A DNA stretch of 64,000 bases from Lytechinus pictus (taxonomy: Eukaryota), in contig NC_087255.1 of NCBI RefSeq assembly GCF_037042905.1, positions 1,674,001-1,738,000 of the forward strand. The letters run 5' to 3'. The position numbers and the translations under genes are program-made. Shown piece by piece: positions 10,580 through 37,084 of this stretch (positions are counted from its first letter, which is position 1; every line of letters begins with the position of its first letter). A model generated the notes under the pieces. The model was not told the origin of the DNA and ran no database searches. It saw nothing but the letters and a program-made list of their open reading frames with translations.

Positions 10580-11122
10580 TCACAAACATACACATGTAGA
10601 TGAACGAGGAGCGGACATGTACACCCTTCCATACTCTTTATCTTCATCCTCCGTTTCTTCTTTTTGTTTTTCGCCTTCTTCCATCAACCCATCCCCCCTT
10701 CCATCACCATGGTTACCAATAATTTCATCCCCATCAGCACCTGTCTCTTCCTCTGACGAGTCTGGTTTCTCTGCTAACGTGCCTTCTGCTTTTGCTACTG
10801 CTAAAGGTTCTTTAGACTGTTGTCTTTCTGCCTGTTTATCTTGTTCTGCCGAGCCTTGCGTCTTGTCTTGTCCATCAGCTTCCACCAGTTGGGCAATATC
10901 TTTGGGAACCTCTATCGATGATTTTTGTTCTGCTTTCTTTTCTTGGGCATCACTGTGGTATCTACCTGAGGAATCTTTGGTTGTCTCATTCACAGTGTTA
11001 TGTGTTTGAGAGTTGTTGTTGCCCCCCTCTGTGGCGGCCATGTTGTTTTCTTTGAGTCTTAGGTAGTGGCTGCCTTCTCTCCAACTCTCTGGTATGTCAT
11101 TAATATGAAGCTCCAGGAGGGT
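10580..11122 (-). CDS. Macro-TIR3 gene terminal exon 12 (acidic low-complexity tail ending in CaaX box CVCL)
   Basis: tttttcag|ACC phase 0; TLLELHINDIPESWREG..E/K/D-rich..PRSSTCVCL*. Confidence 0.8.
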   Translation of the reverse strand, partial: TLLELHINDIPESWREGSHYLRLKENNMAATEGGNNNSQTHNTVNETTKDSSGRYHSDAQEKKAEQKSSIEVPKDIAQLVEADGQDKTQGSAEQDKQAERQQSKEPLAVAKAEGTLAEKPDSSEEETGADGDEIIGNHGDGRGDGLMEEGEKQKEETEDEDKEYGRVYMSAPRSSTCVCL

Positions 11123-14100
11123 CTGAAAAAGAAACCATATCAAGCCATATAATCAATGAATGACAATTGTAATATGCAAAATCTATATACATGTAGCACT
11201 TCAATTCAAAGCATTAAATTGAATTTAAAAAGAAATTAATTTATTTGACTCTCCTAGAAATTCCAGAAAATATGGAGATAATTTCATTTCAAAATGATAC
11301 AGAGGAAAGGTATGATATTAAAAACATGTTTTTTTTAACTTACCAAGAGTTAGATACAGCAGCAAACTCAAACAGAGCAAACAAAAGATAAAATGAGATT
11401 ATGTTTGCTCTTGATATGAGTGCAAACATGTCTTGGGATTTGTAGTACCAACATTTTTTTTAATTTATTTGACGGAGAGAATCAATTTCAGCTTTTATTC
11501 CTAATATGGAAATCTTCCAACATAGGGAGGAAAATCGATAAAAGTCATCAAAAACAGGAGAATGTTGCTTGATTTTAAATGGCATGTGAGGGTAAAACAA
11601 ATATAAGGCATAATACTACAAGTTAGTAGAAATAGATGTTTTAAGGCCACCGCACACCTTACGACCCGACTGGTCGCCGACTGGCTTGCGACTGAGTGAG
11701 GGGAGATGTGACGTCACAGCTCTTGTCAGCTTGAGCGTCGCAGACCGGTCAGAGACAAGTCGCAAGGAAAATCGGAAGGATTTGACATGTCGAATCCTTA
11801 TGACTGGATCGCAAGCTCAATCCAACCTCTAGCCAATCAGACAGCAGAGTTGCATAACGCGTATTATGATAAACAACGCGCATACGCAGTAGTAAGCGCA
11901 ATTTCTCAGATGATATGCCAAAAAGCAAAAAGCGCATGCGTGAGTCACAGATCGGATCGCAAGGTGTGCGGTGTCGAGGCTTATGACTGCCTTGCGATTC
12001 ATCTCCCCTCTCTCAGTCGCAAGCCAGTCGCCGACCAGTCGGGTCGTAAGGTGTGCGGTGGCCTTTATGTGCACTCTTACTTCCAATTTTAATTATCTAT
12101 GCATAACATCTTGCATGTTAATATGATATGCATCAACGTGAGGGCAAAAAAAAAAAGAGGTAAAAAAAATAAGAGGTCGAAAACATGATCTTATATTAGT
12201 GACTGCAGAACGCAGAATGTGTTGTGTGTATGGTTGGTGGGATATTATTTAATGAATATAAATCAATGTCACATGCATTACTACATGTACCTATCAAGCA
12301 CAGTGGAAAAATAATTGGGACCATCAATGAAATGAAAGGAAATCTTAGAATCTGGTACGAGAAGAGTGTCCGATAACAACTACATTTTGTCTTGCAGTTT
12401 CTATGTAGAAGCCTTTTTATTAACAGAGTTTCCACAATACTGTCCAAACAGTTCCAAGACATTTTATCTGGCGATAATTGCTCCCCTATAAATTGCAAAC
12501 ACTAATTGAATAACTAATCTGACCCTTGGATTTAACACTATACCCTAAATCTAACCCTAAACCTAACATAAAACACGATCACAAGTCACAACCCTAACCC
12601 TTACCCTAACCCTTACCCTTACCCTAGTAAGACAAAATAAAGCCTGGAGCAATTGTCGCGGTAACAAATGTTGTGTCACGTCCAAACACAAGGAAGGGAG
12701 TACATTAGTTCAGGTGGGTGTTTCATAAAGCTCTTCGTAAGTTAAGAGCGACTTTAAGAACGACTGGTGATCCTTTCTTGTGGTAAACGATAGATTCATT
12801 GGCGATGGTTTAGCGCGTAAGAAAGGATCACCAATCGTTCTTAAAGTCGCTCTTAACTTACGAACAGCTTTATGAAACGGCCCCCTGGTTTATAGTAAGA
12901 GTTGGCATTTATAGCTTTAACAAATAAAAAGCTCCATTGGAAGATCAGTACATGAAAATCTAAAGGGTCTTACTGTCTTGATATTCTCTTCATACACAAT
13001 GTTTTCTTTCATATTTTGGGGAAAGTTTTTAACAGGCTACACCAATCCATGCAAATGACCTCTCTCCATAATACCTGGTATAAACTGAATAACTAAAAGT
13101 GTTTTATAGAATGAAGCAATTACCTGCAACTCATATGCCAAATTTTCCACATGCATGCACTATTTTTCATTCATGCTTCCAATAAACAAGCTTTAAAAAA
13201 CAATAACAAACAGGGACATTTCATGAACATCTGAGATGTTGTCAGATCAGACAACTTTCCTTGATTCTGATCGGCTGAGAAGCTCAGCAGTATGACTGTT
13301 ACTAAGGTACATGTACATGTAACTGTCAGATAATGATGACTTTCATGAAATGGTCCCCTTTAAAGCAATTAATCACCAAAAGAAAATGTTTGATGAAATG
13401 GATCTTCAAAATTAATGAGGGGCAGAGGGGGGAAAAAAAAAATCAAAATTTCATCTGGATAAATGCCCATGCACATATACATGTACAGAATTGCCATGCA
13501 TTTATATGCAGGAAAGATTGAGTGACTTTGGCAAACATCTTACTAGCTAAGAGAGATCTTAAGACTTGATTGTAAGGTCCAATACAGTCTGAAAGACAGA
13601 AAGGAAATGAAAACAACATGTACACAATAAAAACACATAATACATACTATTAAGAAAAGAAGAGATTTCACAGTATAGAAAATACATATTGAATACTGTA
13701 ATATGGCCTAACCTTTAGGGAGACACAACTATATTGGCCAGAGTAAAGCATAATACCTCGAGTCAAAGACATTAGTCAATATAAACTAGACTTTGTGCAA
13801 TAAATGCTGTGTCTCCTAATAGTAGATAAATGTAAATCTATGTCATGGTTCATAAATTAAACATAATCAGACATCTATAGTTTAAATTCATGAACAAAGA
13901 AAGACAATTAGCAAATTGCTTGAAAAGCTAGATACACCATTTTATTGCCTGCTTTTTAACATGCAAATTTCTGACTTAGGTCAGCAGGCAAGAAAATGAT
14001 TTGTTGACAGCTTTTAATTGTTAAGGATATCAATTAGATGCCAGATATACTGAATAATAAATATCAATTATTTTAAGTTTTGAATTAACATTAAAAATTG

Positions 14101-17100
14101 CAATTCCCTAGATTCATTTCCCAATACGAACATTGATATTGTTTAAAGACAGATTAAATGGTTTTATTGTGTTTATTCAAGCTTACAAGGAATTATGAAT
14201 CAAAGAAGAATCCTTTTGACATTGGTTAAAAAGACTCACTTGTTTATTCACAAATTATGTTAGGAGTCCACTTGGCCAGTGCCAGTTAGCGCCAATCCAA
14301 AGCAGCTGTGGCGCCTAGTGTCGCCTAGTAGCGTGCAGTGGCTCAAAATGCTTCCCAACTGACGCATGGTGGCGCCAAATATTGAATTTGACATGACGAA
14401 AATTTCAAAATATTTTGACATTTTCATCACCAACAGGCGCAGTGGACTCCTAGCTTTAGTTTACCATTGAAGCATTTATCAAATGGTATATATTACAAAA
14501 CAGGTTCAATGATATAGCCAATAGCTCATCTATATGCGAAGATTTAAAAATGAACATGATTTGTTGACGTCAAATGCAAGCAGCTATGCCTCATATGTCA
14601 TGTGGTAGCTATTCATTAAAACCGTTTTCTAAAAAAAAAATGAAAGTGATTTTACCTTAATATCAGAGCTGCCAACATTGGGATGATAGAATCCAGAAGA
14701 TTTCGCGGAGGTATGATTTTGTGAGGGAGCGCGCAGCGAAATGTCCCACGGACAGGAGTTTTGGGTAGCAAAACTCATTAAGAAACAACATTTGATAGTA
14801 TCCGACAGCTGTCTAAACCATCAAAACTTTTGGCACATAGATTAAATGCATGATTAGAGAGATTTCATGAAATGATGAATTGTCTGTCACTGACTAAAAA
14901 AATAAGTTCAAGCCTGATTTCAGGCAATACAGTACTTGAACATAAAATGATTCACAAAAGAATGCATTCAACAAGAAAATACCTTTATTGTCCAGAGGGG
15001 GAAAGGGCTGCAGTAGTGGAAGATGAGCTTGCCTGGCCCTGTAAAGACTTATTATATGTGGCCTGTTTAAAGTCTGAGGGCCGAGGGATTCCTGTGAAAA
15101 TTGCCTTTTTGTAGCAAGCACGCACAGCCAGCCAGCGCCAGGCTAGCTCACTCACGAAAGAGAAAATGTTCGAATCCGATCAACCCAAGTAAAAGTAGGC
15201 CAAAAAAATCTCCACTTTTCTTCTGTTCTTCAGAATTGTCAATAAAATTATTCCTAAAAGTCAGGGTGTAATTATAATAGTAACCCATCGTTGATCCACA
15301 GTTTCAGCTCGAATAAAGCGCACACAAGCTTCCGAAAAATACATTGGACTTCCCTTCTCGCATAGCCTCCTGCCGCGGCGCAGTCTGCCGGAGACCAGGC
15401 AGTGCCGCGCCGGGGCGCGTCGGGGGGCATAGGCATGGAGTGCCGCTAAAGTGTTTCCATCACGCACATGCACATTGCAGAACCAGAAAAAAAAAATTGC
15501 TTGTTAGACTAATTCACCAGTCGTTCGGTAAAATTATCTTCATTTACATTGGAAATCAATGTACGATTATACAAAAACTGGTAAAAGTAACTGGGTAAAA
15601 TGAAAATGTGATAAGGAGTTTCCACGTGGGTGTAAAGGGAGTTGAACATGCTAGACTCGTAAAACAGTCGTTTGTATGAATTTAACAATTTAACAGCAAA
15701 AAATCACAATTATCCGGGAGATTTTGGCATGGGGTCGGGAGAACGGGAGATTGGATCGAAATCCAGTATTCTCCCGCAGGATCCGGGAGACTTGGAAGCT
15801 CTGTAATATTCAATATATTATAAAAAACATTAAAAATTAGATGGAATTCATATCACATGACATATAGAGAAGACGCTTGCATGTGATGTCACAAACCAAA
15901 ACCGCACCACATTTCACTCATTTATGGAAAAAAATGTACCTATTTTCCAAGATTTGGGGTAAAGATCAACCGTTTATTTGCTCATATTCCTGCATTCACA
16001 ACCTTATAATATATGAGTAATCCCTCTTTTCTCTCATACAATAAAACTTACCTTGCACAGCTGATCTGTGTAATCTGGTTCAGTAATCTGTTTGGTTTGT
16101 TCTTTGAGTTTCATGACATTAATCAGAGCTGGCTTGGTAGGAAAGTCCTCTTCTTTACATTTCCTGGAAGTTATAATCATAGTGATATTCATCATCGTTT
16201 AATTCCATTCAATTCAATTTCACTTTATTAGTTTATGATATATAGAAACATTTCTTCCACTGGCTTTGCAAAGGAAATTAACATAAAATTGCACAAATAG
16301 AATGCCAGATAATTTCATTTGAGATTAAATTGGACACTTTTTAGTGGTAAATGAACTGACAGTCTTGATTGATGGGCCCATATTCCGATCTTCAGTTTAA
16401 TCTTAAGTTACTGCTTAAGTATTATAGACAATCAAATGTAACACTTGTCTCAAACAGTAGAGACTCCACTTACCAGCTTATTTGACAATCAAACCTGCCT
16501 ATGAACGATAATCGAGAATCATGGTTTTCTTCGCTATTCAAGCACTAGGAAATGCAAATGTACATTGTAAACAAGATTTAAACATTTTTAGCATCCCACG
16601 ATTTTAGTACACAGTCAGACCATAACCTAAGTTAAACACTTCAGAATACGGGCCATAGAGTTTAAGCTACATGCGGAATTAGAATGTTAGTACTCACCTC
16701 CCTTTTTCAAATCTTCTGAGGATGTGATAGACGGCCATATAGAGAGCCAACATGTCAACCTGAGAGAGTTGCATTTTACCCATTGAACTACTCATATCAA
16801 CAACATCTCGAGATAAACCACACTTATGTTCACCAGACAGCTGGGCCCATAATCCATCTGTCAAACTAACTGCAGTCTGAACCAGATGGAAGTAGGTCGG
16901 CTTCTGAGGGAGAGTATGGACGGATATCGGAAGCAGCAACCCGGCCTCTGGGTTGGATATCCTCTGTCTCCAGATGGCGATGTGGAACTCTTCAACGCAT
17001 TCTGGGCTTTCAAGGTAGTTGGGAGAGAGCACAGGAACGATGCATTTGGATCTTTCCAGGGAATTGACTTTGTTATGTTCATCGCTGGAAACGGCTTTCA

Positions 17101-20100
17101 CTTTCAAAGACGGGGCTTTCATGGCAAGGAGTCTAGCCATGAAGGATACGTACTTCTCATCGTCGCTATGGTAGCTGAAGATAAGATCGCAGTCTGAGGC
17201 AGACATAGGACGTTCATCTTTCTTATCCTCTTTATCGGGTAGAATTTTACTCAGGATAGGCGGGAAAGCTCTCTTGGCTGATATCACACTGTCTTTGCTT
17301 CCAAACTCCTTCTGGAAACTAGTATGGCGAAACTTCTCCATCTCTTCATCAGCAGACAAGGTTGGGATCTGTGATGGATGAGAGATATTCAACAACCATT
17401 GAAAACATACATAACACATATGAATACTAAATGAGCTAATAACAAATCCAGTAAGAAATATTCAAAACAAACAAACATCAAAGTTAACATACATCTCTAG
17501 ACAAACCACATAAATAAATGATATAAATACTATTAAAGCTTAAAGGAACAGGAAACTTTGACAGATGTGCGATGTTGTGAAAATGACTGGTCCAATCAGC
17601 ACTTCATCTAATCACCAGGTCATCTATGACCATTTCATCTCATAACCAGTTGGTCTAATATTTGTTTTATTTTCATTCATTTTGCCCAATTAACACTTAG
17701 TCTAATAAGAACAAATGATATATGGACTAAATTGCTATTGGACCAACTGGTTATTAGACGAAATGGTGAGTGGAAGAAATGGCAACTAGACCATGTGGAT
17801 ATTGGACGAACTGATGGTAGACCAAATGATAGCGGACAAATTGGCATTGGACCAAATGAAAATAAACCATTAAGAGCAGCTTGAAGGTTCCCTCAGGGAA
17901 AGCTGCAACTCTTTGACTTTTGACAAGATGCCTTACTTGGAGTGAAAACTTTCAGTGGAAACACTTACACTCTTATCATCAAACAAGGTCTTGATTGTTT
18001 CTGTCTGGTCCACTCTCTTTCCTTTAAGCCACTGAATGACCGCTGGACACACAGTCTTGACCATATCATCAAAGACATCAGGTGTCCCCTTGACCATTGG
18101 TATATGAGTGAATTCAGTCTGGATGGTGTCTAGGTCTTCAAGGCAGATTGGGATGAGTTGAAGGTGCTGCTTACCCTGAAAATAAATCAAAAATTAAGTT
18201 TAAGTTTATGTCCAAGTTTATTTCAACTCGTAAAAAGAAAAATGAATTACATGAAGTAAAATGCTGTGATACAATATACGATCATTGAATAAGCTTGATA
18301 TAAAAGAGAAGATATCACATAAGTTAATTTAGATTGAGATGAGTTGTCTCAGTCAGAAAAATGTCTAAACAAATACTTAGTTGAAATATAACGTTGCTGC
18401 ATTTGAAAGAAAATTTCCTTTAAATGTTTAGTTTAAACAGTTATTCGTCGGTCATAAAAAAAATCGGTGGAATCTCAATCAGTAAGAGTGCAGTAAAAGA
18501 CTTGGGCCAATCTTACAAAAAATTGATTTTAATCAAAAATCAAACTGCAATTGACTTAAAATTCCTATCTCTAACTTCACAAATTTATATTTTGCTGAAT
18601 CTATTGCAAATCTTTGTATAAGATTGGCCCCTGGGATCTACAGTGGACAATTCACTTTTCTACTCTTAAGAACAGGTAAAATTTTACACACAAATAACAA
18701 AAGTTCATTGTAACTTTTTGAAGGTATTGGAAAATTGCTGATAAAAGCACTCCTTAACTATTCAGCATACATGTACATCCACTGGTTAAAATATAATAAC
18801 ATTCATTTTGATTTATTACCTTTGAATAATGTTTGGCCTGAGCAAGAGCAAACTCCTCTTGACACACAGCTGATTTGAGATAAGGTTTTGATATGAGAGC
18901 TAGCATACATCGAGAGCCATCGATAGAGTGATAGAGGGTACGCTGCCAGGATTTACCTGATTAAAAAAAAACAATTATATGAATCAATGACAAGTATACT
19001 TTCATCGACTTCACTTCATTGACTACAATTTCATCACCATCATTCTATAAAACTTGATTTCAAGGGGAAATGGGGTGCATCATGCATTTCCGGGGTAACA
19101 TGGTATTGGAGCAGGCATGTTATGTCTGTGGGTATGGCCAACAAAAGAGACACATTGAACAATTGGTTTCATCTAAATTCTTACTCTTCTTGCACTCTAC
19201 ATCATTACCTTGACTGCATGCATCGTATTCTGTGCATGAATAAACATCATGATAACTTTAAATAACGCACACAAACATAACAAACCTGCACAAAGACATG
19301 AAACTGAATAAAACTATAAAAGTGACTGAGGAAAAGATAATAGACTGTAGAAAAAATACAGTGCATGGTGTACCGTAAAGCCACTACACTAGACTGGAGA
19401 CAATTACCTGTTTTCAATTCTTGGACATCAAAGAAAAGCTTCAGGTCCGGGGCTAGTTTTTGGAGCAATGCCACAAAGCGATTGGCCTTCTCTGTATCAC
19501 GATGCGAGTATGAGAGGAAGATATCATATCGGAGTGGATCAAACTCGGCTACTCTCAGCTCAGTATGGAAGGTAACAGATAGAGAAACTGAAAGCTGAGT
19601 GCACGCTTCTCCTATCTTTGAAGGATCATGAGGTCTAGAGGAAAAATGAGAAATTTCTTCTACATATCACATTTCTCAAAACTTGGATTTATATCACTCA
19701 TTTGAAAAATTTAATGAGAAATATCACAGTAATGGTATTTACTAGTGATAGAGAGGGGTTAGAACATAAATTGTTTGTTCCAATCCTTTCGTCCACATGT
19801 CACATTTCTAAAAACTTGGAACGTTATCACTCATCTAAAAAATAGTATAATTATGATAATGTATAAAATATATACATAAAATGAACACAAAAATTAACAT
19901 TTCTATTCATTTAAACATGTTCACATATTATATTATTCAATAGAACCTTCATTTTTGTATCCTATTCTTTCTCGACTTTCAGCATGATGTATAGATTTCT
20001 CTATTGAATGTCAACACATGCATTACAATTACCATCACCATATTGAAGGTTTTTTGTTTTTGTGTTCTCATCGATATGCAGGTAATTTGTCATACCTTAT

Positions 20101-23100
20101 AATGTTCATTTTACCTACACATGTATATTGAAGTTTATATCCTACATAAATCAAATAATGTATGCTGATTGCTTTAAATAGCATCATGTGACCAAATATA
20201 TTCTCACTATTTTGTGATGATGTTGAAAATGAAACGCCAACTGAAGAAAAGTTGCTATTCCGTGACGTCAATGATGGAATAGTGCACTATTCCATCATTG
20301 ACGTCACAGATCATTGACACAATATCTCGGGTGCAGGCACAAATGCACATTCCGCTGAGCACACAGCTTCAGGAAAAGTAGTTCAGTCAGCGCACTGGTT
20401 TTGGTTCAGACTTTTTTAAAGATGAACTACGTGTACAAAAACTAGATTATCAAGATCTGTTGTTCTAACTTATTAAACGTAGGATATAAAACAAATATAC
20501 CAGGCCTTTATTTTGAAAGTATAAAGGGAATTATTTATCCTTGGTTGTACTGGCAAAACTATACTATTTTTCTCTCAGGGCTTCGCCCCTCAGAAAAAAT
20601 ATTAATGCCAGTCCAAGCTCAAACAAATAATTCCCGCTATAATTACTCAAAGAATGGTATATTTGTATAATATACTTCATAATATTCCGTATTAAGAATC
20701 TTCCTATAAGATCCGATTGGTCAAATGTTAGTTTCACTTTCACAATCAATCATCACTTTCTGTGATGGAACTTTTTTGTTTCGCTAATCCCTTCAGCCAA
20801 TAGGGTCATAACGCGTTAGATCTTAAAATATTTTGATTACAAGTGAAATATAGAGGTCATTACCCCTTGAGTTTTTCGTTCCATCATTCCAAATTATTCT
20901 TCATCACATCCAGTGACGATCGCACAAGATCTAGATGCGCGCACGCAATGTACATACACACTTTACTTAACGCAAAATAAAAGTTCATTGCCAATACATT
21001 GTTTTGTTGTGATGGTAAAATTCCTTTGTGAGGTCACAATTATCTTACCTGAGCAAAATCTACATGCTTAGCCGCAGTTTAAATGTGAGATAAAGAATAT
21101 TTTCAAAGTGAACCTTGATTTTTTTTTATCAAATTTCCTTTCTTCATTTTATAGTGGTTCCAGATGTGACATATAAAGCATATAACCAACGTTGGTGAAA
21201 GGGATGGACAAATCATCACTTCTTCAGCAAGCTGAATGTACTCGCTATCTTTCCTCAGCTTCGTTTCGGAAAGATGGCTACATCCAGCTTGCCGAGGAAG
21301 TGATAGTTTGCCCATCACCTTCACAAACGGATGAATAGATGGATAGAAAAGGGAATGGTTGATGAAGTACATACCTGCAGTCAACGTACTGAACAAGACC
21401 CATGTATGTTGGCATCATCTCAACCGAGTCTACATAGATAGGGGCAAGCATGTCACGGAGTGCTCTACGATTGCAGCAAAGAGCAATGTTATACTGCTCT
21501 ATACAAGCCTTGTTCTTCAGGTAATTTGGGCTCAACACTGTAAAAAGAAAACAGGAGAAATAAATGTAAGCTCATGTCAATTCCCGGACTTTTGAATAGT
21601 ACACTCAAAAACACAAAATTAGAAATGGTGTGTAAAGAGTATTTGGTGATTGCATATCAATAATCACAGGTATACATATCTTCAAGGTCTAGTCCATGCC
21701 AAGAAAAAATCAATTTGAATAAAAGAGTTAAAAAAAATCCAACAACTTAAAACTGAAAAATCAATCAAAATTGGATGTAAAAAATGCCATCTGTAAGTTT
21801 TGTTTATTGCACAAAACAGTGATATGCATATCACTGGAGGGATTAAAATGTGGTTACAGATGTCACACCTGCACTTTTTCTTTTGGACATATTTTATCAG
21901 ACAAAATATTCAAATACTGTCCTCCGAGACCATTAACATACAATTTGGTTTGATTCATCAAGAAAAAATATAATATCCTTGTCATAATTTATGCATTTAG
22001 TGGAGATCCTCTGTATTATAAAATATCTAAAAGATGCTATAATTATCATCATCAAAATAGAATGTTAACCTACCTGTAACTACCCTTGCACTCTTCATCA
22101 TGATAGTATACATATCTTCTTGAAAGACACTATCTTTATTGATATCCTGCTGTGAACTATCATAGATCCGAACACCTTCCTTTGCTCCAGTCAACTTCTC
22201 TCGGATTACCTTAGCAACCCCTTCATCTTCCTCACTGAATGACAGATAAACATCAAACTCCAACGGCACAGCCTGAAACATCAAGCAAAAAGGGTTCAAA
22301 ATAAATATGTGATATAACAAAATCTCTCATCGCTGATTTGAATTTAATTGATTTTGAAAAAAATTCTTCAGCATCCGTTGTAACAAAAAGTTAACTGAAT
22401 CTTTGAGTATCTTTGTTATGCTCCAAGTTATCATCAAAACTACAATCACAATGCAGAAGTGCTACCACACCTGACTGTCTGGTTTTCATGACATTATCAA
22501 GACCTAGTTAGTTTCCTATGTGAGTGTGAGAAGAATAAAGTAATTGCCTTATAAAAAAATCCAAGTGTACCTCATGTGGAGGAAATAGTCCCATTATGTG
22601 TACACGGCAGGGAAAAAAATTACATGGGGCTCAGGGTAATTTGGTCCCTGAAATGAGCCTCGGAGGGCATTTCATGAAAGTTATCAGCGCTGACTAAATT
22701 GTCAGAGCTGATAATTTCAGTGAAATCCTTGGTTTTGATTGGCTGAGAGGCAATAACCTCTGACTGTTACCATGGTAACTGTCGGAGAAAGACAAGTTGT
22801 CAGTGCTGACAACTTCATGAAACGGTCCCCTGGAGAATCCCCATTCACTGCAATGTTAAAGCATATCTAATGTTGCAATACAAGCAGTAGGTTGTGAAAA
22901 GTGACCACCCCAAAAAAATGTTTGTCTGGTACACGTTTAAAGATTGCTGGTTGCGATGGTGGCGTACCCAAGTGTGTTTTCATTACGCTCTCAGCTTTCC
23001 TCACCAAAATTACCATCCTTAATCTTGAGGCACCATAACAGAGATCTGAGTCATGTTTGATTGTGACATTTGCAGAACAGGAAAGTTGCTGGGATATCCC

Positions 23101-26100
23101 AAAATTGGTGAAACCTTGGACTTGACTTTTGTTAAGATAGGAAAAATGACAATGGCCAGCTAGAAATTAGGTCTTGGCTCGAAGAGAGAGTTTATTTCAT
23201 TTTCTTTGGCTTTATGGCCGCTTTAGAGGCACCATATACAAAAGAAAATATAAAATTCTGTAAACAAACTAATCACATACTCACATTATCATCGAGAAAA
23301 AATGAGGAATTGTACCTTAGGTAAGAGGAGTTGCATCTCATAGCGTTCCTTGAGCTCAGTAAACTTCTTACGGACCTCGCTGAATCTTCTAAGTGAATGG
23401 CTCTGAAGATCACCATCAATCACCTTGGCGTAGAGAACCAGTTTAAGAATCCTGAGAGGTAGTCCTGCTTTCATCCACTTTACAGCAGCTTCAACCATAC
23501 CTTTCATCATGCTGACCTCACCATACCCCTACAGAATGTCAAAACAAATTGAGCTCAAGATTAGTGTGGTAAATTTTGAACAGCACATTTTTACAATCAT
23601 CCAGTCAAAGAATATGTAGTAGTCTAAAGCTGTGCCTCCAAGTAGATGATGCAACAGGTTCACCAAAACATTATGGATTAGTGCTAAAAAATAAATCCAG
23701 ACAAAGATTTCTTAACCTTTCTCATCACATAGTTATTAACCCACATCATAGCATAATCCATTTATTTTTGTCAGACAGTGCATCGCAAGGGTCTATAAAA
23801 AAACGTGTTCCAAACAATATTACTGAAACAACTGATCTTCTGATCCTAAGCACTGTTTGAAGACATTGAAATTTGTGAGATATTTCCTATTTTTGAGCAA
23901 GCGCCATGAGCGCCCAGCTGAGGCGGATACCGGCGCTATACAAGAACCCATCATCATCATCATCATCATCTTCTGTATGAAGCAATGAGAATTTTACCTT
24001 ACTAAACAGCATGATCATAAACATTAGGATTATTGAATGGATGCTCAGATAATTACAAAGCATTTTTATGGGCCACCCTACAAATAACAGTCTACTTATT
24101 ACAGCCATTCATAAACCTGTGACCAAAGATAATGTCATAATCAATATGCAGTTTTATAGGTCACCCAGTTAGCCAACATGCTTCATAGCATTTTTTAGTC
24201 ACCATGTACATTGTATACTCTCATGATCTCCAGTACGGAACAACCTTTATATACATGTATATACTTAAGAATAACTCAATGCTTCATATTAATCTATTTA
24301 ATGGACCACCTTAAATAGTTGTATGGACCATCCTGTATATAAGCATACTCAGTAATTTACATTAATATTTCATGGGCCACCTTGTAAATTGTCACTCTCT
24401 TGTACATGTACATGTATACAGTATCAAGTATTTTTATGGACCACCCTGTATAATAGCATAATCAATACTTCTTATTAATCTACATGTATTTATTGGGCCA
24501 CCTTGTAAAGGCCTGGTCCCACTGGTCGACGGACACAAAACATACTCATAACGGATACAGAGGACAAGCAAAATTTTGGGGTGACTTCATCCGTTTTCAT
24601 CCACTCCAGACGATGGACATAATGGGTGCTGAAATCACAGATGATAGATGCTCGATGGATATATAGAACATATAAAACACGTATGCAAAGAGTACACAAC
24701 AGATACATAACGTTTTCCAAAGGATGGCAAGACTCTTTTCCATTTTTCATCCTCTCTGCATCCATAAGCCATAAGCCTTAATTTTCACTCTCTTGTACAT
24801 AGTATATATCAAGTAATTTTATGGACCACCCTGTAGCATACTCAATACTTCATATTTATCTATTTTATTGACACACTGTAAAGGCCTGTATACTAACCTG
24901 ATCGCCAGTATTAAGCAGAGGAGTGATAACGCTACCATCTTCATTATTGAGAATAGGAACCAGGCAACGAAACACATTAGCTACCAACTCTTGAGGGCGC
25001 CCTGCTGCTCCAAAGCTAGGGAGAATAATGATTACATTGTTGTAAAAATCATCATGAATCAAGAAAATTAGAGAAAATATCTTACATATCTTTAGATTAT
25101 CTCAAGATTTATTTTCAGTCATATAAGATATACGACCAGCAAGTATAATTTTTTTAATCCTGCTGTGTTATCTGACAACTCAAATTTTCATTTTGTTTGA
25201 AAAAACAGTTCATAACTCATGAAAGATGCAGGTATCGTATTCTCAGTTTACAGTCTACAAAAGATAGCTTGATATATTTTACAATGATTTTTATATTTTT
25301 TTTCATGATAATGAATAACTTCATTACAATGACCAACTGATTTGTAAGTTGAATAGTCTCAGTGTCACAATAATTATCATATGCAGTAGTCAGTGTTTTG
25401 CACAAGTATGAAGGGTCGTCACTGTTACTGAAACCACGCAGGGCCTCCAATGATATCACATATCACTATCCCTGGATGAGCCCAGCTAGCCTACTTTTCT
25501 TTGTGTCCTATATACTAAAGTCAATTTCTTGAATATGACAAATGAATGACACAGTTGACACTGAAATGGCAATGCCCTGACATACACTACACGTACTTCA
25601 CTACAGCTGTTGTTCAAATTTGCCAAAGTGTTCACATGCAACGATCATGCCCAATTGTCACATATTATGGGTATTATTAACCTGTTGACTACTGAAATCT
25701 TTAATTCCCATAGACTCTGTTCATCGACCATCCCGTTCAAGGAGGTAACAGGTTAATAGATCAAGTGTTTATCTTTTTATAGGCACGTATCAATTTGATA
25801 TTAGACTGACCTTTATTGTCACCTAAAAAAAAAAATTTGAAAGACTAATGAAGATAAAATGCCTTTCTCAGGGGCACTGTAAGAGTGCCATGTCTGGTTT
25901 CCAGACCCAAACTTTAATGAAGTCAGGGGTCTTCAATAGACCACTTGACCAGGGCACTTTATATTCTGTGCTTTGTAAAATGAAGTATTTGTTTAGTATT
26001 AGTACATGTACAACCCTGTACAAATACAAATAACCAAAGCATTCAATTACAGTTTAGTTACAAGAATGATTTCCCCATGTACCTACATGTAATATATCAA

Positions 26101-27966
26101 AGAGATACATGTAAATAGGCCTATAGACTAGTTGCATAGAATGTAGGCTAGCTGATATTACTGGCTTCCTGTTGATGTCTACTTCCTAGATCATTTCCTA
26201 TCCAGATATGAAAGGGTAAAGTGCTTTTCTGACCGCCCATAGCTTTCAATATAGATACATGGTAACCAACGATTTCATCACATCAAAGCTATTCCTATAC
26301 ATATATTTTAAGAGCTTATTTTCATACTATTTACAGTGTAGTTTCATCCTTAAGCAGGAATTTTGTTTCTGGTATTGTATCGCAATTTGGAACATTTTAT
26401 AAGGAAGCACTGCTTACACAAAAAATTTTGTAAATTATATATTTACATGAGAATGTATAGAACATAGTTGAGAGTTTATCTCTTGTGACCAAAACTGACG
26501 ATAAAGTTTGGAATTAAAGCAACAATACTCCCTGTTATTTTATGCATCATTGCAACCTTTATCTTTATGAATTGTTTCACTCAAATTTCAGTAGCTAGCT
26601 GCAAATTCAATATTAAGGTCACCCTTTAACCCTTATACCCTTAAAAAAACATACTAGTTGACTTTATCAAAGTTCAAGCAAATTTTAACAAAAATTTTGA
26701 CACTGTCAATATCTAAAGTACATTTACATTTAGAATTTTAGAACCATTATTTAGCATCAATTATTTGACTACACTTGAGTTTTCTCCCATCACCATCAAG
26801 AATTTAATAATTTGATGAACTACATGTAGCTTGCCAGTGAATTTCTTTGTCAAAAATGCTCTCAACCAGTCAGACGCAATGATTAAGTACAAAGGGTTGG
26901 TTTCATAAACCATCTTGTCAGTAATCTTCATTATCAAATTGCTCTCAATCAATCGGATGAACAGATTATTGTATAAGGGAAGGTTTCATGAACCACCATG
27001 TCAGTGATCACTGTCAGATTAGTTGTCATCAAATCAGATGCATGGATTTCAGTATTATGAGGGATTGTTTCACGAACCACCTTTTCAGTGACACGATATT
27101 CACGGTCAGACTTTCTGTCAACCAATCAGAATTTCAGTAGCTAAAAAGCTCATCATTGGAAATCACAGGCAAGGTGCTTCATGAAACAGTCCCCTGGTAT
27201 AAAGGTCTAAGGGTACCTCCTAGTTTCAAAGCAGAGAAGTCTCTTATAGGGAAGCTTATCGGGGAGGGATTTAGACCACCAGCAGGAGTAGAGTTTACGA
27301 AGATCTTCCTCTTTATCCCTGGCTAGGTTTCTAACGCTGATATCTAATGTCCGCTTCAAGGCTCCAATCACCGAAGTAGGTGTAGCGGCATAGTCATCTA
27401 AGATTGAAAGTAAATGGGAATATTACAATTAGGATTGATTCTTTTGATATCAATTTATTATCAGGCTTGCAAAACACACACTGGCACTGTATTTAAAAAA
27501 CACTACCTGCAATGAATATACATAGAGTATGGTAGTACCTGACAAAGTTTCAACAATGTAAAAATAGAAGGAAAAAAAATCATCATCATACAGTGCAAGG
27601 GTTAGTAGGCAATACACCTACATACAAGTGTTCATTTTATGCCAACAACTTGATATCAAGAATTCCACAAATTAATTTCTTGATTTCTTGAAAAAAATCA
27701 TTTTTTGTTTGTATCAAGAATTAGGATTAAATGGTAAAATAGCTTGCCTCATAGGTGTGGTAATCCCAGTTGGTTCAAATAGCAATACATATGCATGAAA
27801 TCCTCTTTTAATGATACTTACTAGCGAAGGCAGAAACACAAATGACATCAACTTTATCCTTCCTCTTGAGTTTGGTAATATCTCCTAGACACATATCAAT
27901 CTGACATTCTCCATTCTGGGTTAAGACTTTGATGGAATCTGCCACCACCAGACTGGTTGATCCCAT
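10580..27966 (-). CDS. Uncharacterised Macro-TIR-TIR-TIR-CaaX protein, about 971 aa, 12 coding exons (whole-gene span)
   Basis: Hand-spliced exons: 27966-27822, 27397-27217, 25015-24898, 23528-23316, 22272-22074, 21537-21375, 19634-19408, 18956-18820, 18175-17969, 17368-16698, 16163-16052, 11122-10580. All are GT-AG with compatible phases and total 2916 nt without an internal stop. Macro motifs: LGDITK..VDVICVSA and PLLNTGDQG. Three TIR box-1 motifs: FDVYLSFS, YDIFLSYSHRD, CDLIFSYHSDD. Ends CVCL*. Confidence 0.85.
11644..12064. mobile_element. PIF/Harbinger-type MITE with long TIRs and TTA target duplication
   Basis: aggccaccgcacaccttacgacccgactggtcg..gactgag at both ends in inverted orientation; flanked by TTA/TTA. 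Confidence 0.85.
12455..12682. repeat. Element with internal degenerate telomere-like (TAACCC)n tract
   Basis: taaccc/ttaccc units at 12540-12625, flanked by gataattgctcc / ggagcaattgtc inverted repeats. Confidence 0.55.
12711..12888. mobile_element. Fold-back MITE of a family with TTTCAT(G/A)AA subtermini; relatives at about 13213-13360, 22665-22832, 26893-27197 and 48933-49072
   Basis: Near-perfect arms of about 70 bp (tttcataaagct..cgtaagttaagagcgactttaagaacga..ggtgatcctttctt). Confidence 0.8.
14262..14450. mobile_element. Short MITE, TIR GGAGTCCAC, flanked by TA
   Basis: ta-ggagtccac ... gtggactcc-ta. Confidence 0.55.
14664..15803. mobile_element. 1.14-kb non-autonomous DNA transposon (TIR CAGAGCTGCCAA/TTGGAAGCTCTG) with a TAATAT flanking duplication, nested in an older palindromic element
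   Basis: Inverted termini, subterminal cgggaga repeats, taatat on both sides; host arms atatgtcatgtg (14593) and cacatgacatat (15855). Confidence 0.7.
16052..16163 (-). CDS. Macro-TIR3 gene exon 11 (RKCKEEDFPTKPALINVMKLKEQTKQITEPDYTDQLCK)
   Basis: cttccag| acceptor, |gtaagt donor; bridges phase 2 to phase 0 exactly as the flanking exons require. Confidence 0.8.
16698..17368 (-). CDS. Macro-TIR3 gene exon 10 (linker plus complete TIR3)
   Basis: IPTLSADEE..CDLIFSYHSDDEKYV..SKCIVPVLSPNYLESPECVEEFHIA..LLLPISVHTLPQKPTYF; donor gtgagt. Confidence 0.9.
17585..17870. repeat. Dispersed quasi-palindromic repeat (ttggtccaat/tctaat..ttagacgaaatgg family); further copies at about 33650-34048 and 58091-58480
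   Basis: Three clearly homologous copies in the window. Confidence 0.8.
17969..18175 (-). CDS. Macro-TIR3 gene exon 9 (TIR2 C-terminus)
   Basis: tttcag|GGT; GKQHLQLIPICLEDL..TLFDDKS|gtaagt; phase 0 matches the next exon. Confidence 0.85.
18820..18956 (-). CDS. Macro-TIR3 gene exon 8 (TIR2 core with catalytic-position Glu)
   Basis: GKSWQRTLYHSIDGSRCMLALISKPYLKSAVCQEEFALAQAKHYSK; GT-AG. Not present in the supplied ORF track. Confidence 0.9.
19408..19634 (-). CDS. Macro-TIR3 gene exon 7 (end of TIR1, start of TIR2)
   Basis: PHDPSKIGEAC..RYDIFLSYSHRDTEKANRFVALLQKLAPDLKLFFDVQELKT; GT-AG. Confidence 0.9.
21375..21537 (-). CDS. Macro-TIR3 gene exon 6 (TIR1 C-terminal half)
   Basis: VLSPNYLKNKACIEQYNIALCCNRRALRDMLAPIYVDSVEMMPTYMGLVQYVDCR; GT-AG. 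Confidence 0.9.
22074..22272 (-). CDS. Macro-TIR3 gene exon 5 (TIR1 N-terminal half)
   Basis: tttcag|GCT; AVPLEFDVYLSFSEEDEGVAKVIREKL..IMMKSARVVT; donor gtaggt. Confidence 0.9.
23316..23528 (-). CDS. Macro-TIR3 gene exon 4 (end of Macro domain plus linker)
   Basis: ctgtag|GGGTAT..AAG|gtacaa; GYGEVSMMKGMVEAAVKWMKAGLPLRILKLVLY. Confidence 0.85.
24898..25015 (-). CDS. Macro-TIR3 gene exon 3 (SFGAAGRPQELVANVFRCLVPILNNEDGSVITPLLNTGDQ)
   Basis: ccctag| acceptor, |gttagt donor; Macro 'P.I.TG..G' loop. Confidence 0.85.
27217..27397 (-). CDS. Macro-TIR3 gene exon 2 (NDYAATPTSVIGALKRTLDISVRNLARDKEEDLRKLYSCWWSKSLPDKLPYKRLLCFETR)
   Basis: cttag| acceptor, |gtaccc donor, phase 1 to 2, open frame. Confidence 0.85.
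27822..27966 (-). CDS. Macro-TIR3 gene coding exon 1 (MGSTSLVVADSIKVLTQNGECQIDMCLGDITKLKRKDKVDVICVSAFA)
   Basis: Acceptor tgtttaag| at 27977/27976, ATG at 27966, donor gtaagt; carries the GDIT Macro motif. Confidence 0.85.
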
Positions 27967-28338
27967 CTTCAGATCCCTTAAACAGAGAAATTATTATTCA
28001 AACCCTACATGTAAATACAAAGAAAGGAGAAAAGGGGTTATGAAGCGGATGGACTGTAGATTTACTTTGCAAACTCCCAGCACAAACTTTAAGTCTAATT
28101 CTCTCTCTTATTTTCAACTCATAGTTTTGTAAGATGCTATTTTTTACAAGTTTAGAAACAAGTCTCTCTTGCATTTGTTCCTTGTGCAGTTAGATTTTTT
28201 TTGCCAAAGATTTACAAAGATATATAAAGGAGAAAGTGGTATAGAGACAGGAAAATCAAAGAGAGAGGTGAAAGAAATCAAAGAGAGAGGGTGACAGAGA
28301 CAAAGTGGGTGGGAAGGTTACTTGAAAGACTATCATAA

Positions 28339-36354: not shown

Positions 36355-37084
36355 CTATAAGAGCTTTGGAAGCTGTTTCAGTTTGCTGATATCCAGAATG
36401 TTTCCCTTGTCTTTTTCATCCCCTGTTAAAGGCATACAAGGCTCCTTATCTCCCTTCCTCAGTTGTCCTAGAACATTTGTAGGCTTACTGTCTGAAGTGA
36501 CCTTTCCAGTTCTTGGGGTATTAATCCCTTCTGACTGATCGGTAATGATGTCTTTCGGAGGTGTCGGATTGTACGATAGTTTGGTTGGTTTAGATTGCAA
36601 GCCACGCTTGATTTCAATTGTTCCTTCTTTAGGTGAGTAAGTTCTGGCAACAGCAGGCGACTTCATAAAGCGTACTGGCGATGGCTTCGCTAAGTGTCCA
36701 ACCCCTCTTGGCGATGAAGAATCAGCACAGGACACTGCAGCCTCACATCCACTCATCAACCCATACTTCTCCATGTATTTACGACTCGCTAATGACATAT
36801 TGACGCCGATGCTCGAATCCACATCGCCCCCTCTGCCGCTAGCACCACCATCTTCTCTGATACCAGTAAGAACCGATCTTAGAAGTGGATTCACTCCACC
36901 TCGCTTTCCCGGTGTCCTGTCACCTTGGAAACCAGCAGACATCTTGGCTAGTTCACCATCACTGAGATACTTCATGGCGATGGCATTGGCCTCCATGCTC
37001 AGATCTGAGGGGTCAAAGGTGAAATCTGCCAGCGAGACATAGTTGATTTGAGGATGAAGATCAGGACTCACATTGTACAGCGAT
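36355..37084 (-). CDS. STIL: STIL terminal exon 14 (STAN motif, C-terminal TIM-like motif)
   Basis: [55 protein letters not shown]. Confidence 0.92.

What the first reader, a model, noticed from the sequence alone, without database searches (positions are those of the whole stretch)
10580..27966. Animal Macro-TIR-TIR-TIR-CaaX protein: a candidate single-chain, Thoeris-like NAD+/ADP-ribose signalling system
Seen in sequence: 12 phase-consistent exons give about 971 aa with an N-terminal Macro-fold domain (GDIT; VDVICVSA; PLLNTGDQG), three tandem TIR domains of the compact TIR_2 type (YDIFLSYSHRD..F.D..EL..G..W..S...L.LIS..YL.S..C.EE), and a prenylation box. No LRR, transmembrane, death, SAM or ARM region is evident, so it is not a TLR, IL-1R, MyD88 or SARM1. 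Established knowledge: TIR domains with the conserved Glu are NADases that make ADPR-derived messengers (SARM1, plant TIRs, Thoeris ThsB). Macro domains bind ADP-ribose, and in type II Thoeris a Macro domain (ThsA) senses the TIR product. Inference: this protein couples a messenger writer and a reader or regulator in one membrane-tethered chain, possibly an undescribed invertebrate innate-immune or cell-death module. The ORF track shows only fragments and misses the first two Macro-domain exons.
Basis: partly seen in the sequence, partly recalled or inferred. Interest (0 to 1): 0.92.

Follow-up and report, generated by a model that had tools for sequence, protein, structure and literature searches.

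The report
Prenylated Macro plus triple-TIR sea-urchin protein
A real, expressed 12-exon sea-urchin gene fuses a divergent ADP-ribose-type Macro domain to three TIR domains and a lipid-anchor signal. It belongs to a conserved, untested invertebrate family related to a stand-alone bacterial Macro-TIR gene, and is probably a ligand-gated NAD+-cleaving immune switch.

Summary
Twelve GT-AG, phase-consistent exons on the minus strand (27966-10580) give 971 aa ending in CVCL. Stranded RNA-seq reads and 3.5-kb transcript contigs join exons 1-5 exactly at the predicted junctions and show the start of exon 6, so the Macro and TIR exons are one transcript. The protein is 97.9% identical to an "uncharacterized protein" of Lytechinus pictus.

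TIR1 is MyD88-like, with Gln at the catalytic position. TIR2 has an invariant Glu, and TIR3 usually has Glu. A CaaX box ends 43 of 70 family members.

Full-length relatives occur across echinoderms, hemichordates and lophotrochozoans. Macro-plus-one-TIR homologues occur as stand-alone genes in at least nine bacterial phyla.

The Thoeris-like reading is only partly supported: the Macro is not the ThsA type, no effector domain exists, and no biochemistry exists. A 2026 preprint supplement already lists MACRO+TIR for family members, untested. The scan noted this same stretch twice before (s1-317574, s1-317680); both notes agree with my tests.

The parts
27822..27966 (-). Exon 1 (aa 1-49): start ATG at 27966; Macro strands b1-b3 with GDIT (27885-27874) and VDVICVSAFA
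   Evidence: RNA joint 27822|27397
27217..27397 (-). Exon 2 (aa 49-109): Macro loop 1 replacement (NDYAATPTSVIGAL), EDLR, CWWS and LLCFE motifs
   Evidence: RNA joints at both ends
24898..25015 (-). Exon 3 (aa 109-148): Macro helix plus strand and loop 2 (ITPLLNTGDQ)
23316..23528 (-). Exon 4 (aa 149-219): end of the Macro domain (G of loop 2, W..AGLPL, last strand and helix) and the linker
   Evidence: AlphaFold model
22074..22272 (-). Exon 5 (aa 220-286): first half of TIR1 (FDVYLSFSEED)
   Evidence: Pfam TIR_2; RNA joint 23316|22272
21375..21537 (-). Exon 6 (aa 286-340): second half of TIR1; CIEQY at 21505-21491, with Gln at the catalytic position
   Evidence: RNA loose end at 22074 reads into this exon
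19408..19634 (-). Exon 7 (aa 340-416): linker and start of TIR2 (YDIFLSYSHRD, FFDVQELKTG)
18820..18956 (-). Exon 8 (aa 416-461): TIR2 core; CQEEF at 18864-18850, where the family-invariant second Glu sits at the catalytic position
17969..18175 (-). Exon 9 (aa 462-530): C-terminal part of TIR2 and start of the helical linker
16698..17368 (-). Exon 10 (aa 531-754): helical linker and all of TIR3; CVEEF at 16999-16985
16052..16163 (-). Exon 11 (aa 754-791): conserved post-TIR3 helix (PALINVMKL, 16132-16106)
   Evidence: N769 invariant
10580..11122 (-). Exon 12 (aa 792-971 plus stop): acidic low-complexity tail (pI 4.6) ending in the CaaX box CVCL (10594-10583); stop at 10582-10580

Best explanation
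The gene encodes a cytosolic, probably geranylgeranyl-anchored protein that couples a nucleotide-sensing Macro domain in cis to a TIR enzyme array. Shown: the 12-exon structure, its expression as one mRNA, the Macro fold, three TIR domains, and the conserved CaaX. Inferred: the Macro domain binds an ADP-ribose-family ligand, because it keeps the adenine-anchoring Asp of GDIT and the phosphate loop TGxQG. Whether that ligand is an upstream cue or the TIRs' own product is open. Ligand binding would control self-association of the TIR array. TIR2, and in this copy TIR3, carry the catalytic-position Glu and would cleave NAD+ to ADPR or cADPR-type products at a membrane. TIR1, which is MyD88-like and has Gln instead of Glu, would serve as a non-catalytic assembly or docking surface. 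The logic is sensor-to-TIR-effector, as in TIR-STING or SARM1, inherited from a self-contained bacterial Macro-TIR gene and elaborated in animals by TIR triplication and a lipid anchor.
For: Gene and transcript.

Tight Macro-TIR coupling: this Macro clade is almost always fused to a TIR. In bacteria, 31 of 36 relatives carry a TIR. Full-length Macro+TIR genes occur in 31 or more species of at least nine phyla, with no conserved neighbour within 4 kb, so the unit is self-sufficient. The bacterial TIR has an invariant CxEEFN.

Catalytic-position Glu: TIR2 has an invariant EE, and its second E aligns with the Roq1 and TLR2 position. The TIR3 Glu aligns with the L6 Glu. Independent structure-based calls in the Hurieva et al. 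2026 supplement give GLU for the TIR2 and TIR3 of family members and LYS or GLN for TIR1.

Established knowledge: many non-TLR animal TIRs with this Glu make cADPR (bioRxiv 10.64898/2026.04.20.719644). ThsA macro domains bind ADPR-type ligands and self-aggregate on binding (PMC11204291).

CaaX: 43 of 70 family members end in C-a-a-X, mostly with X = L.

Ancient, constrained architecture: TIR1, TIR2 and TIR3 each form one group across phyla, and the Macro domain is the best conserved part (65% identity to a crinoid).
Against: No binding or enzymatic data exist for any member. The Macro domain lacks the canonical loop 1 (NAAN...GGG is replaced by SAF-x-x-DY) and has its own invariant residues (W88, E106, W166) of unknown role, so it may bind something other than ADPR or may be an enzyme. 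The TIR3 Glu is not invariant in the family, and TIR1 has lost it. TIRs with a Glu can still be inactive (TLR2). The full-length model has only moderate inter-domain confidence (pTM 0.59). Some paralogues and isoforms lack the CaaX box. The bacterial neighbourhoods are only occasionally defence-like.
Confidence: 0.45

Rival explanations
1. Strict Thoeris-like closed loop. The TIRs are the infection-triggered writers of an ADPR-derived messenger. The Macro domain of the same or a neighbouring chain reads that messenger. The output is not NAD+ loss but ligand-driven higher-order assembly at the membrane, or recruitment of a downstream partner.
For: Macro and TIR are in one chain, conserved from bacteria to animals. 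ThsA macro domains read TIR products and aggregate on ligand binding (PMC11204291). The membrane anchor is conserved.
Against: The Macro domain is not of the ThsA type. There is no effector domain in the chain and no conserved partner gene in bacteria. Nothing shows that the TIRs sense infection. Product-to-reader feedback is indistinguishable from upstream sensing with the present data.
Confidence: 0.15
2. The Macro domain is an enzyme, a hydrolase that acts as a brake or eraser. It would degrade the TIR product, ending the signal or preventing autoactivation, or it would remove ADP-ribose from targets.
For: Aravind and co-workers predicted that Macro domains in TIR-containing anti-phage systems regulate them by targeting cADPR (PMC9503650). 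The same Macro variant is fused to an ADP-ribosyltransferase in a bacterial AFDB entry (A0A365XW13, TM 0.78), which recalls DarT-DarG and SirTM-Macro pairs. The invariant Glu106 and Trp residues could form a new active site.
Against: The catalytic Asn and Gly-rich loop of MacroD-type hydrolases are absent. The closest structural neighbours include non-catalytic binders such as macroH2A1.1 and PARP9/14 macro2.
Confidence: 0.15
3. The protein is a non-enzymatic, membrane-tethered multi-TIR adaptor for the expanded sea-urchin TLR/IL-1R repertoire. It would be functionally like TIRAP/MAL plus MyD88. The Macro domain would be a protein-interaction or regulatory module, and the Glu residues would be vestigial.
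For: The best solved match of TIR1 is the MyD88 TIR (E 1e-12), with Gln at the same position as MyD88. The best match of TIR2 is TLR2. The lipid anchor parallels the membrane targeting of TIRAP. There are five paralogues in this genome, as is typical of echinoderm immune gene families.
Against: The Macro-TIR unit exists as a stand-alone gene in bacteria, which have no TLR pathway. The Glu-Glu of TIR2 is invariant across about 48 sequences from several phyla, which argues for selection on catalysis.
Confidence: 0.15

Closest known systems
Bacterial stand-alone Macro(variant)-TIR proteins (about 340-360 aa; for example in Nostoc, Coleofasciculus, Ca. Uabimicrobium, Chloroflexota and Acidobacteriota; uncharacterised)
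   Same: True homologues. The Macro variant is the same (33-40% identity; G-D-[IL]-T, SAFPxxY, EDLR, CWxS, LCFE and W..GLP motifs). It is followed collinearly by a TIR with CxEEFN..R.R and LPTYM..Q..DCR motifs, which are shared with the animal TIR1 and TIR2.
   Different: They have one TIR, not three. That TIR keeps the catalytic Glu, which the animal TIR1 has lost. They have no acidic tail and no CaaX box.
Type II Thoeris (ThsB TIR plus ThsA TM-Macro)
   Same: It pairs a TIR domain with a macro-fold ADPR-derivative binder. The structural neighbours reported for the ThsA macro domain (OiMacroD, PARP14 macro2, macroH2A1.1, Af1521) are the same as those of this domain.
   Different: It is a two-gene bacterial operon, and its Macro domain sits on a transmembrane effector. 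Here there is one chain, no effector domain, no Pfam ThsA_Macro match, and ThsA structures are not in the top 50 neighbours. The ligand and direction of signalling are unknown.
TIR-STING (bacteria and oyster), TIR-SAVED and SARM1
   Same: The logic is single-chain: a nucleotide-binding sensor domain gates assembly of a TIR NADase. These are the best analogy for how this protein may work (established knowledge; PMC9402430 is listed).
   Different: The sensor here is a Macro domain rather than STING, SAVED or ARM. There are three TIRs per chain, one of them catalytically dead. The protein has a lipid anchor.
MyD88 and TIRAP/MAL adaptors
   Same: TIR1 is most similar to the MyD88 TIR and shares its Gln at the catalytic position. 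The protein is targeted to membranes, as TIRAP is.
   Different: There is no death domain and no PIP2-binding motif. Two further TIRs carry Glu, and there is a Macro domain.
macroH2A1.1, PARP9 and PARP14 macrodomains
   Different: Identity is 13-16%. Loop 1 is replaced. The domain has its own invariant Trp, Glu and Trp residues. It is undetected by Pfam.

Membership tests
Macro domain superfamily | Three-layer alpha/beta/alpha fold with a mixed six- to seven-stranded sheet | tested here: met
Macro domain superfamily | Adenine-anchoring Asp after strand 2 (GDIT) and phosphate-binding loop 2 (G-x-x-G after strand 6) | tested here: met
   The HMM alignment to Af1521 matches GDIT to GDIT and TPLLATGnQG to FPAVSAGIYG. 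The Asp is nearly invariant in the family.
Macro domain superfamily | Loop 1 (NAAN...GGG), including the catalytic Asn of MacroD-type hydrolases | tested here: not met
   It is replaced by VSAF-[PA]-x-DY...T-x-IGAL. There is no Pfam Macro, Macro_2 or ThsA_Macro hit at E<=1.
Macro domain superfamily | Binding or hydrolysis of ADP-ribose derivatives | not testable with these tools
   Needs ITC, DSF and enzymatic assays.
Catalytic (NADase/cyclase) TIR domains | Glu at the conserved alpha-C position | tested here: met
   Met for TIR2 (invariant) and for TIR3 in this copy. Not met for TIR1, which has Gln. Independent structure-based calls agree.
Catalytic (NADase/cyclase) TIR domains | NAD+ cleavage that depends on that Glu | not testable with these tools
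   No member has been assayed; the supplement of 10.64898/2026.04.20.719644 marks the clusters as not tested.
Thoeris defence system | Separate ThsB (TIR) and ThsA (sensor plus effector domain: SIR2, TM and so on) genes in one operon | tested here: not met
   It is a single animal gene. No effector domain is found. The bacterial homologues have no conserved neighbour.
Thoeris defence system | ThsA_Macro-type (PF20016) or SLOG sensor | tested here: not met
   No Pfam hit. The 8V6Q-8V6S structures are not in the top 50 structural neighbours. A weak protein-language-model similarity (0.81) is only a lead.
SARM1 | ARM-SAM-SAM-TIR architecture | tested here: not met
   Only TIR domains are detected. 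The model shows a Macro domain and three TIRs.
MyD88 | N-terminal death domain plus one TIR | tested here: not met
   No death domain. Only TIR1 resembles the MyD88 TIR.
CaaX-prenylated proteins | Cys at position -4, followed by two largely aliphatic residues and X at the C-terminus | tested here: met
   The window protein ends in CVCL. 43 of 70 family members end in CaaX, mostly with X = L. Actual prenylation was not testable.

The most novel reading that the evidence does not exclude
Animals retain a self-contained, membrane-anchored ADP-ribose signalling switch related to a single-gene bacterial Macro-TIR immune module. The catalytic TIR2 and TIR3 would make an ADPR or cADPR-type product. 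The divergent Macro domain of the same family would read that product, driving self-amplifying assembly on membranes. That would be a one-protein writer-reader circuit with no counterpart in vertebrates.
Probability: 0.15. Interest if true: 0.85.

Novelty: new variant of a known kind. Interest (0 to 1): 0.6.

Why it matters
TIR enzymology in animals has only just been opened up (cADPR production by many non-TLR animal TIRs, 2026 preprint). What senses or regulates those TIR products in animals is unknown. This family gives a concrete, testable candidate. A dedicated, highly conserved Macro clade is found almost only next to TIR domains, from bacteria to sea urchins. It is fused to one dead and two live-looking TIRs and a lipid anchor. 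It also documents a probable prokaryote-to-animal continuity of a single-gene NAD+/ADPR module. It shows that the Pfam models scanned here miss this Macro clade. Sea urchins, with five paralogues, tractable embryos and coelomocytes, are a practical system for testing it.

Tried and rejected
1. Pfam, NCBIfam and PADLOC scans of the N-terminal domain found no Macro family. Recognition needed structure and profile methods.

2. Complex prediction of Macro against TIR1 as two chains returned no verdict (score 0.01, controls not run). I do not use it for or against binding.

3. I looked for a conserved partner gene beside 31 bacterial Macro-TIR loci and found none. At most 3 loci share any neighbour family. 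Pfam on ten immediate neighbours gave a mixed picture: a type I restriction-modification methylase, a SIR2-STAND protein and a second TIR protein in three loci, and housekeeping genes in the others. A defence-island location is therefore not established.

4. One metagenomic homologue (P0174) sits among many small ORFs and a ribonucleotide reductase, which may be a phage or mobile element. I did not pursue this.

5. Literature: I found no open paper on Macro-TIR or 'three TIR domains' proteins in animals. Gerdol et al. 2017 (the ecTIR-DC classification) and the Burroughs/Aravind 2015 and 2020 papers are not held. I therefore could not check whether the family already has an ecTIR-DC number.

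6. A second copy inside the window: none.

7. An artefact or pseudogene reading is rejected by the RNA junctions and the orthologue.

8. A transmembrane segment is rejected.
Full report
**1. Is the thing there?**

The window is AT-rich animal DNA. Stop-free segments on the minus strand between 28.0 and 10.5 kb carry recognisable TIR and Macro-like peptides. Reading the flanks of each segment, I placed 12 exons:
- 27966-27822
- 27397-27217
- 25015-24898
- 23528-23316
- 22272-22074
- 21537-21375
- 19634-19408
- 18956-18820
- 18175-17969
- 17368-16698
- 16163-16052
- 11122-10580

Every intron is GT..AG and the phases are continuous. The 2916-nt CDS translates without a stop into 971 aa ending in CVCL.

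My one RNA look covered 21990-27989. Two stranded RNA-seq runs of the same species and two transcript contigs (3556 and 3474 nt) show joints at exactly the four predicted junctions of exons 1-5. A loose end at 22074 is the reverse complement of the start of exon 6. First mates lie only on the + strand over the exons, as expected for a minus-strand mRNA.

So the Macro-type exons and the first TIR exons are one transcript. The contig length fits a full-length mRNA.

The whole protein is 97.9% identical over 971 aa to XP 'uncharacterized protein LOC129270701 isoform X1 [Lytechinus pictus]' (969 aa, same ...STCVCL end). This supports the 3' exons and indicates a Lytechinus-type sea urchin.

**2. 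The domains**

Pfam finds TIR_2/TIR on the exon pieces of three separate domains. On the orthologue and ten homologues it finds exactly three TIR stretches and nothing else. There is no candidate transmembrane helix.

The N-terminal about 215 aa get no Pfam, NCBIfam or PADLOC hit, yet they are the best conserved part of the protein (65% identity to a crinoid).

I aligned 29 N-terminal domains (A1) and modelled the crinoid one. The model has mean pLDDT 92.8 and pTM 0.90.
- Foldseek against the PDB returns only macrodomains at the top: macroH2A1.1, Capsaspora macroH2A, Oceanobacillus MacroD, YmdB, PARP14 and MacroD2, at E about 1e-9.
- A profile search of PDB sequences finds only macrodomains. 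It aligns the family's GDIT with Af1521's GDIT (the adenine-binding Asp) and TPLLATGnQG with FPAVSAGIYG (phosphate loop 2).

The canonical loop 1 (NAAN...GGG) is replaced by VSAF-x-x-DY...IGAL. The family has its own invariant residues: Trp88, Glu106 and Trp166 in orthologue numbering.

Conclusion: this is a genuine but divergent macrodomain. ADP-ribose-type binding is plausible. MacroD-type hydrolysis is unlikely. Specificity is unknown.

**3. The three TIRs are not equivalent**

In family alignments, TIR2 has an invariant C-x-E-E. TIR1 has C-x-E-Q (Lys in Lingula). TIR3 has x-E-E in most members but not all.

HMM alignments to solved TIRs fix the register.
- TIR2's second Glu aligns with the Glu of Roq1 (WCLEEL) and TLR2.
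- TIR1's best solved match is the MyD88 TIR (E 1e-12), and its Gln aligns with MyD88's Gln.
- TIR3 is divergent, and its second Glu aligns with the L6 Glu.

Independent structure-based calls in the supplement of Hurieva et al. (bioRxiv 10.64898/2026.04.20.719644) say the same for family members. In Lingula the results are GLU for the TIR at 385-520, LYS for the TIR at 223-365 and GLU for the TIR at 596-783. Owenia TIR1 is GLN, and Trichoplax gives GLN and GLU.

A full-length model of the orthologue (aa 1-800) gives four well-folded domains joined by short low-confidence linkers, plus a helical segment between TIR2 and TIR3 (pLDDT 84.4, pTM 0.59).

**4. The tail**

Exon 12 is acidic and low in complexity (pI 4.6) and ends in CVCL. 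Of 70 full-length family members, 43 end in C-a-a-X, mostly with X = L, often preceded by basic or Ser residues. This is far above chance and points to geranylgeranyl anchoring. Some paralogues and isoforms lack it.

**5. Relatives**

An exhaustive HMMER search with the TIR3 exon and a word-indexed search with the Macro domain find collinear Macro-TIR-TIR-TIR proteins of 760-1060 aa in these groups:
- echinoderms, all five classes, several paralogues each
- hemichordates
- brachiopod
- nemertean
- annelid
- many molluscs
- a flatworm

The same Macro clade occurs in a Trichoplax TIR protein (AFDB B3S091, TM 0.88). All are named 'uncharacterized' or 'TIR domain-containing'. This genome has five such loci, each with the same four-exon Macro domain, and none is elsewhere in the window.

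Shorter homologues (about 340-360 aa, the same Macro variant plus one TIR) lie on clearly bacterial contigs. A scan of GTDB representatives found full-length copies in 31 or more species of Alpha-, Gamma- and Deltaproteobacteria, Cyanobacteria, Chloroflexota, Acidobacteriota, Planctomycetota, Verrucomicrobiota, Bacteroidota, Gemmatimonadota and Myxococcota.

Their TIR has an invariant CxEEFN and shares the LPTYM..Q..DCR motif with the animal TIR1. Of 36 bacterial relatives of the Macro domain, 31 carry a TIR. No neighbouring gene is conserved, and immediate neighbours are only sometimes defence-like.

In a tree of TIR domains, TIR1, TIR2 and TIR3 each form one group across phyla (support 82, 99 and 100). 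The bacterial TIRs sit with TIR1 and TIR2, opposite the fast-evolving TIR3. The triplication is therefore old. The bacterial one-TIR form is the simplest version of the unit. The direction of transfer is not shown.

**6. How it most likely works**

Shown:
- the gene and its expression
- the fold assignments
- the residue patterns
- the CaaX conservation
- the exclusive Macro-TIR association
- the stand-alone state in bacteria

Established knowledge:
- TIRs with the alpha-C Glu cleave NAD+, and many non-TLR animal TIRs make cADPR.
- Macro domains bind or process ADPR derivatives.
- ThsA macro domains read a TIR product and aggregate on binding.
- Aravind's group predicted that Macro domains regulate TIR systems.

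Inference: the Macro domain is the receiver of an ADPR-family ligand. It gates assembly of the TIR array. TIR2 and TIR3 are the catalytic output. TIR1 is a MyD88-like non-catalytic scaffold. The lipid anchor places the reaction on a membrane.

I put this at about 0.45. A hydrolase role for the Macro domain and a purely adaptor role for the TIRs remain live rivals.

**7. Comparison and novelty**

The protein fails the membership tests for four families:
- Thoeris: it is a single gene, has no effector domain and is not a ThsA_Macro.
- SARM1: it has no ARM or SAM domain.
- MyD88: it has no death domain.
- MacroD-type hydrolases: it lacks loop 1.

Its true relatives are the uncharacterised bacterial Macro-TIR proteins.

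The architecture is not wholly unrecorded. RefSeq carries the gene models, and Table S2 of the 2026 preprint lists a 'MACRO' domain beside the TIRs of Lingula, scallop, Biomphalaria, Capitella, Owenia and Macrostomum members. That preprint does not discuss them and did not test them.

Two other first-stage notes on this same stretch (s1-317574, s1-317680) reached the atypical-Macro and TIR-asymmetry points, which my tests confirm.

I therefore rate the finding as a new variant of a known kind, of solid but not exceptional interest (0.6). It is real, conserved, timely and directly testable, with no function known.

Noticed in passing
window 22590-22990, 23790-23990, 24390-24790 (introns 4 and 3 of the gene): Short intronic stretches have very high RNA and contig depth on both strands and many loose ends running into unrelated sequence. 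They look like members of dispersed, transcribed repeat families rather than parts of this gene.
   Followed up: no
window 27269 (exon 2, codon 92); also 22237 and 23418: All RNA reads covering 27269 (6 of 6) carry the other base. This changes Ser92 to Pro, which is the family-consensus residue (S-K-P-L-P). The other two exon differences are at third codon positions. This is an allelic difference or an assembly-individual variant.
   Followed up: partly
window about 36355-41471, minus strand: A neighbouring gene has long open, Ser/Pro/Gln-rich low-complexity exons of 254, 218 and 400 aa. It is unrelated to the TIR gene and was not analysed.
   Followed up: no
Lys/Glu-rich repeat-like sequence flanks the first one.
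   Followed up: no
L013:7210-8421 (Ca. Uabimicrobium amorphum chromosome): Directly downstream of the bacterial Macro-TIR gene lies a second 403-aa protein with a C-terminal TIR. It may be a tandem paralogue.
   Followed up: no
L035:2261-5794 and L030:4536-5972: In two bacterial loci the Macro-TIR gene sits next to a SIR2-nSTAND1 NTPase and next to a type I restriction-modification methylase, respectively. This hints at defence islands but is not general.
   Followed up: partly
AFDB A0A365XW13 (bacterial, 402 aa) and ESM Atlas clusters: The same divergent Macro fold is fused to an arginine ADP-ribosyltransferase domain (TM 0.78) and to DUF4145. Separately, canonical Pfam Macro plus TIR_2 fusions of about 360 aa exist in Bacteroidota. 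The Macro-TIR pairing therefore seems to have arisen more than once.
   Followed up: no
L001/L002 (metagenome contigs carrying P0174): A Macro-TIR homologue lies among many small unannotated ORFs, a class II ribonucleotide reductase and another TIR_2 protein. This may be a phage or other mobile element.
   Followed up: no
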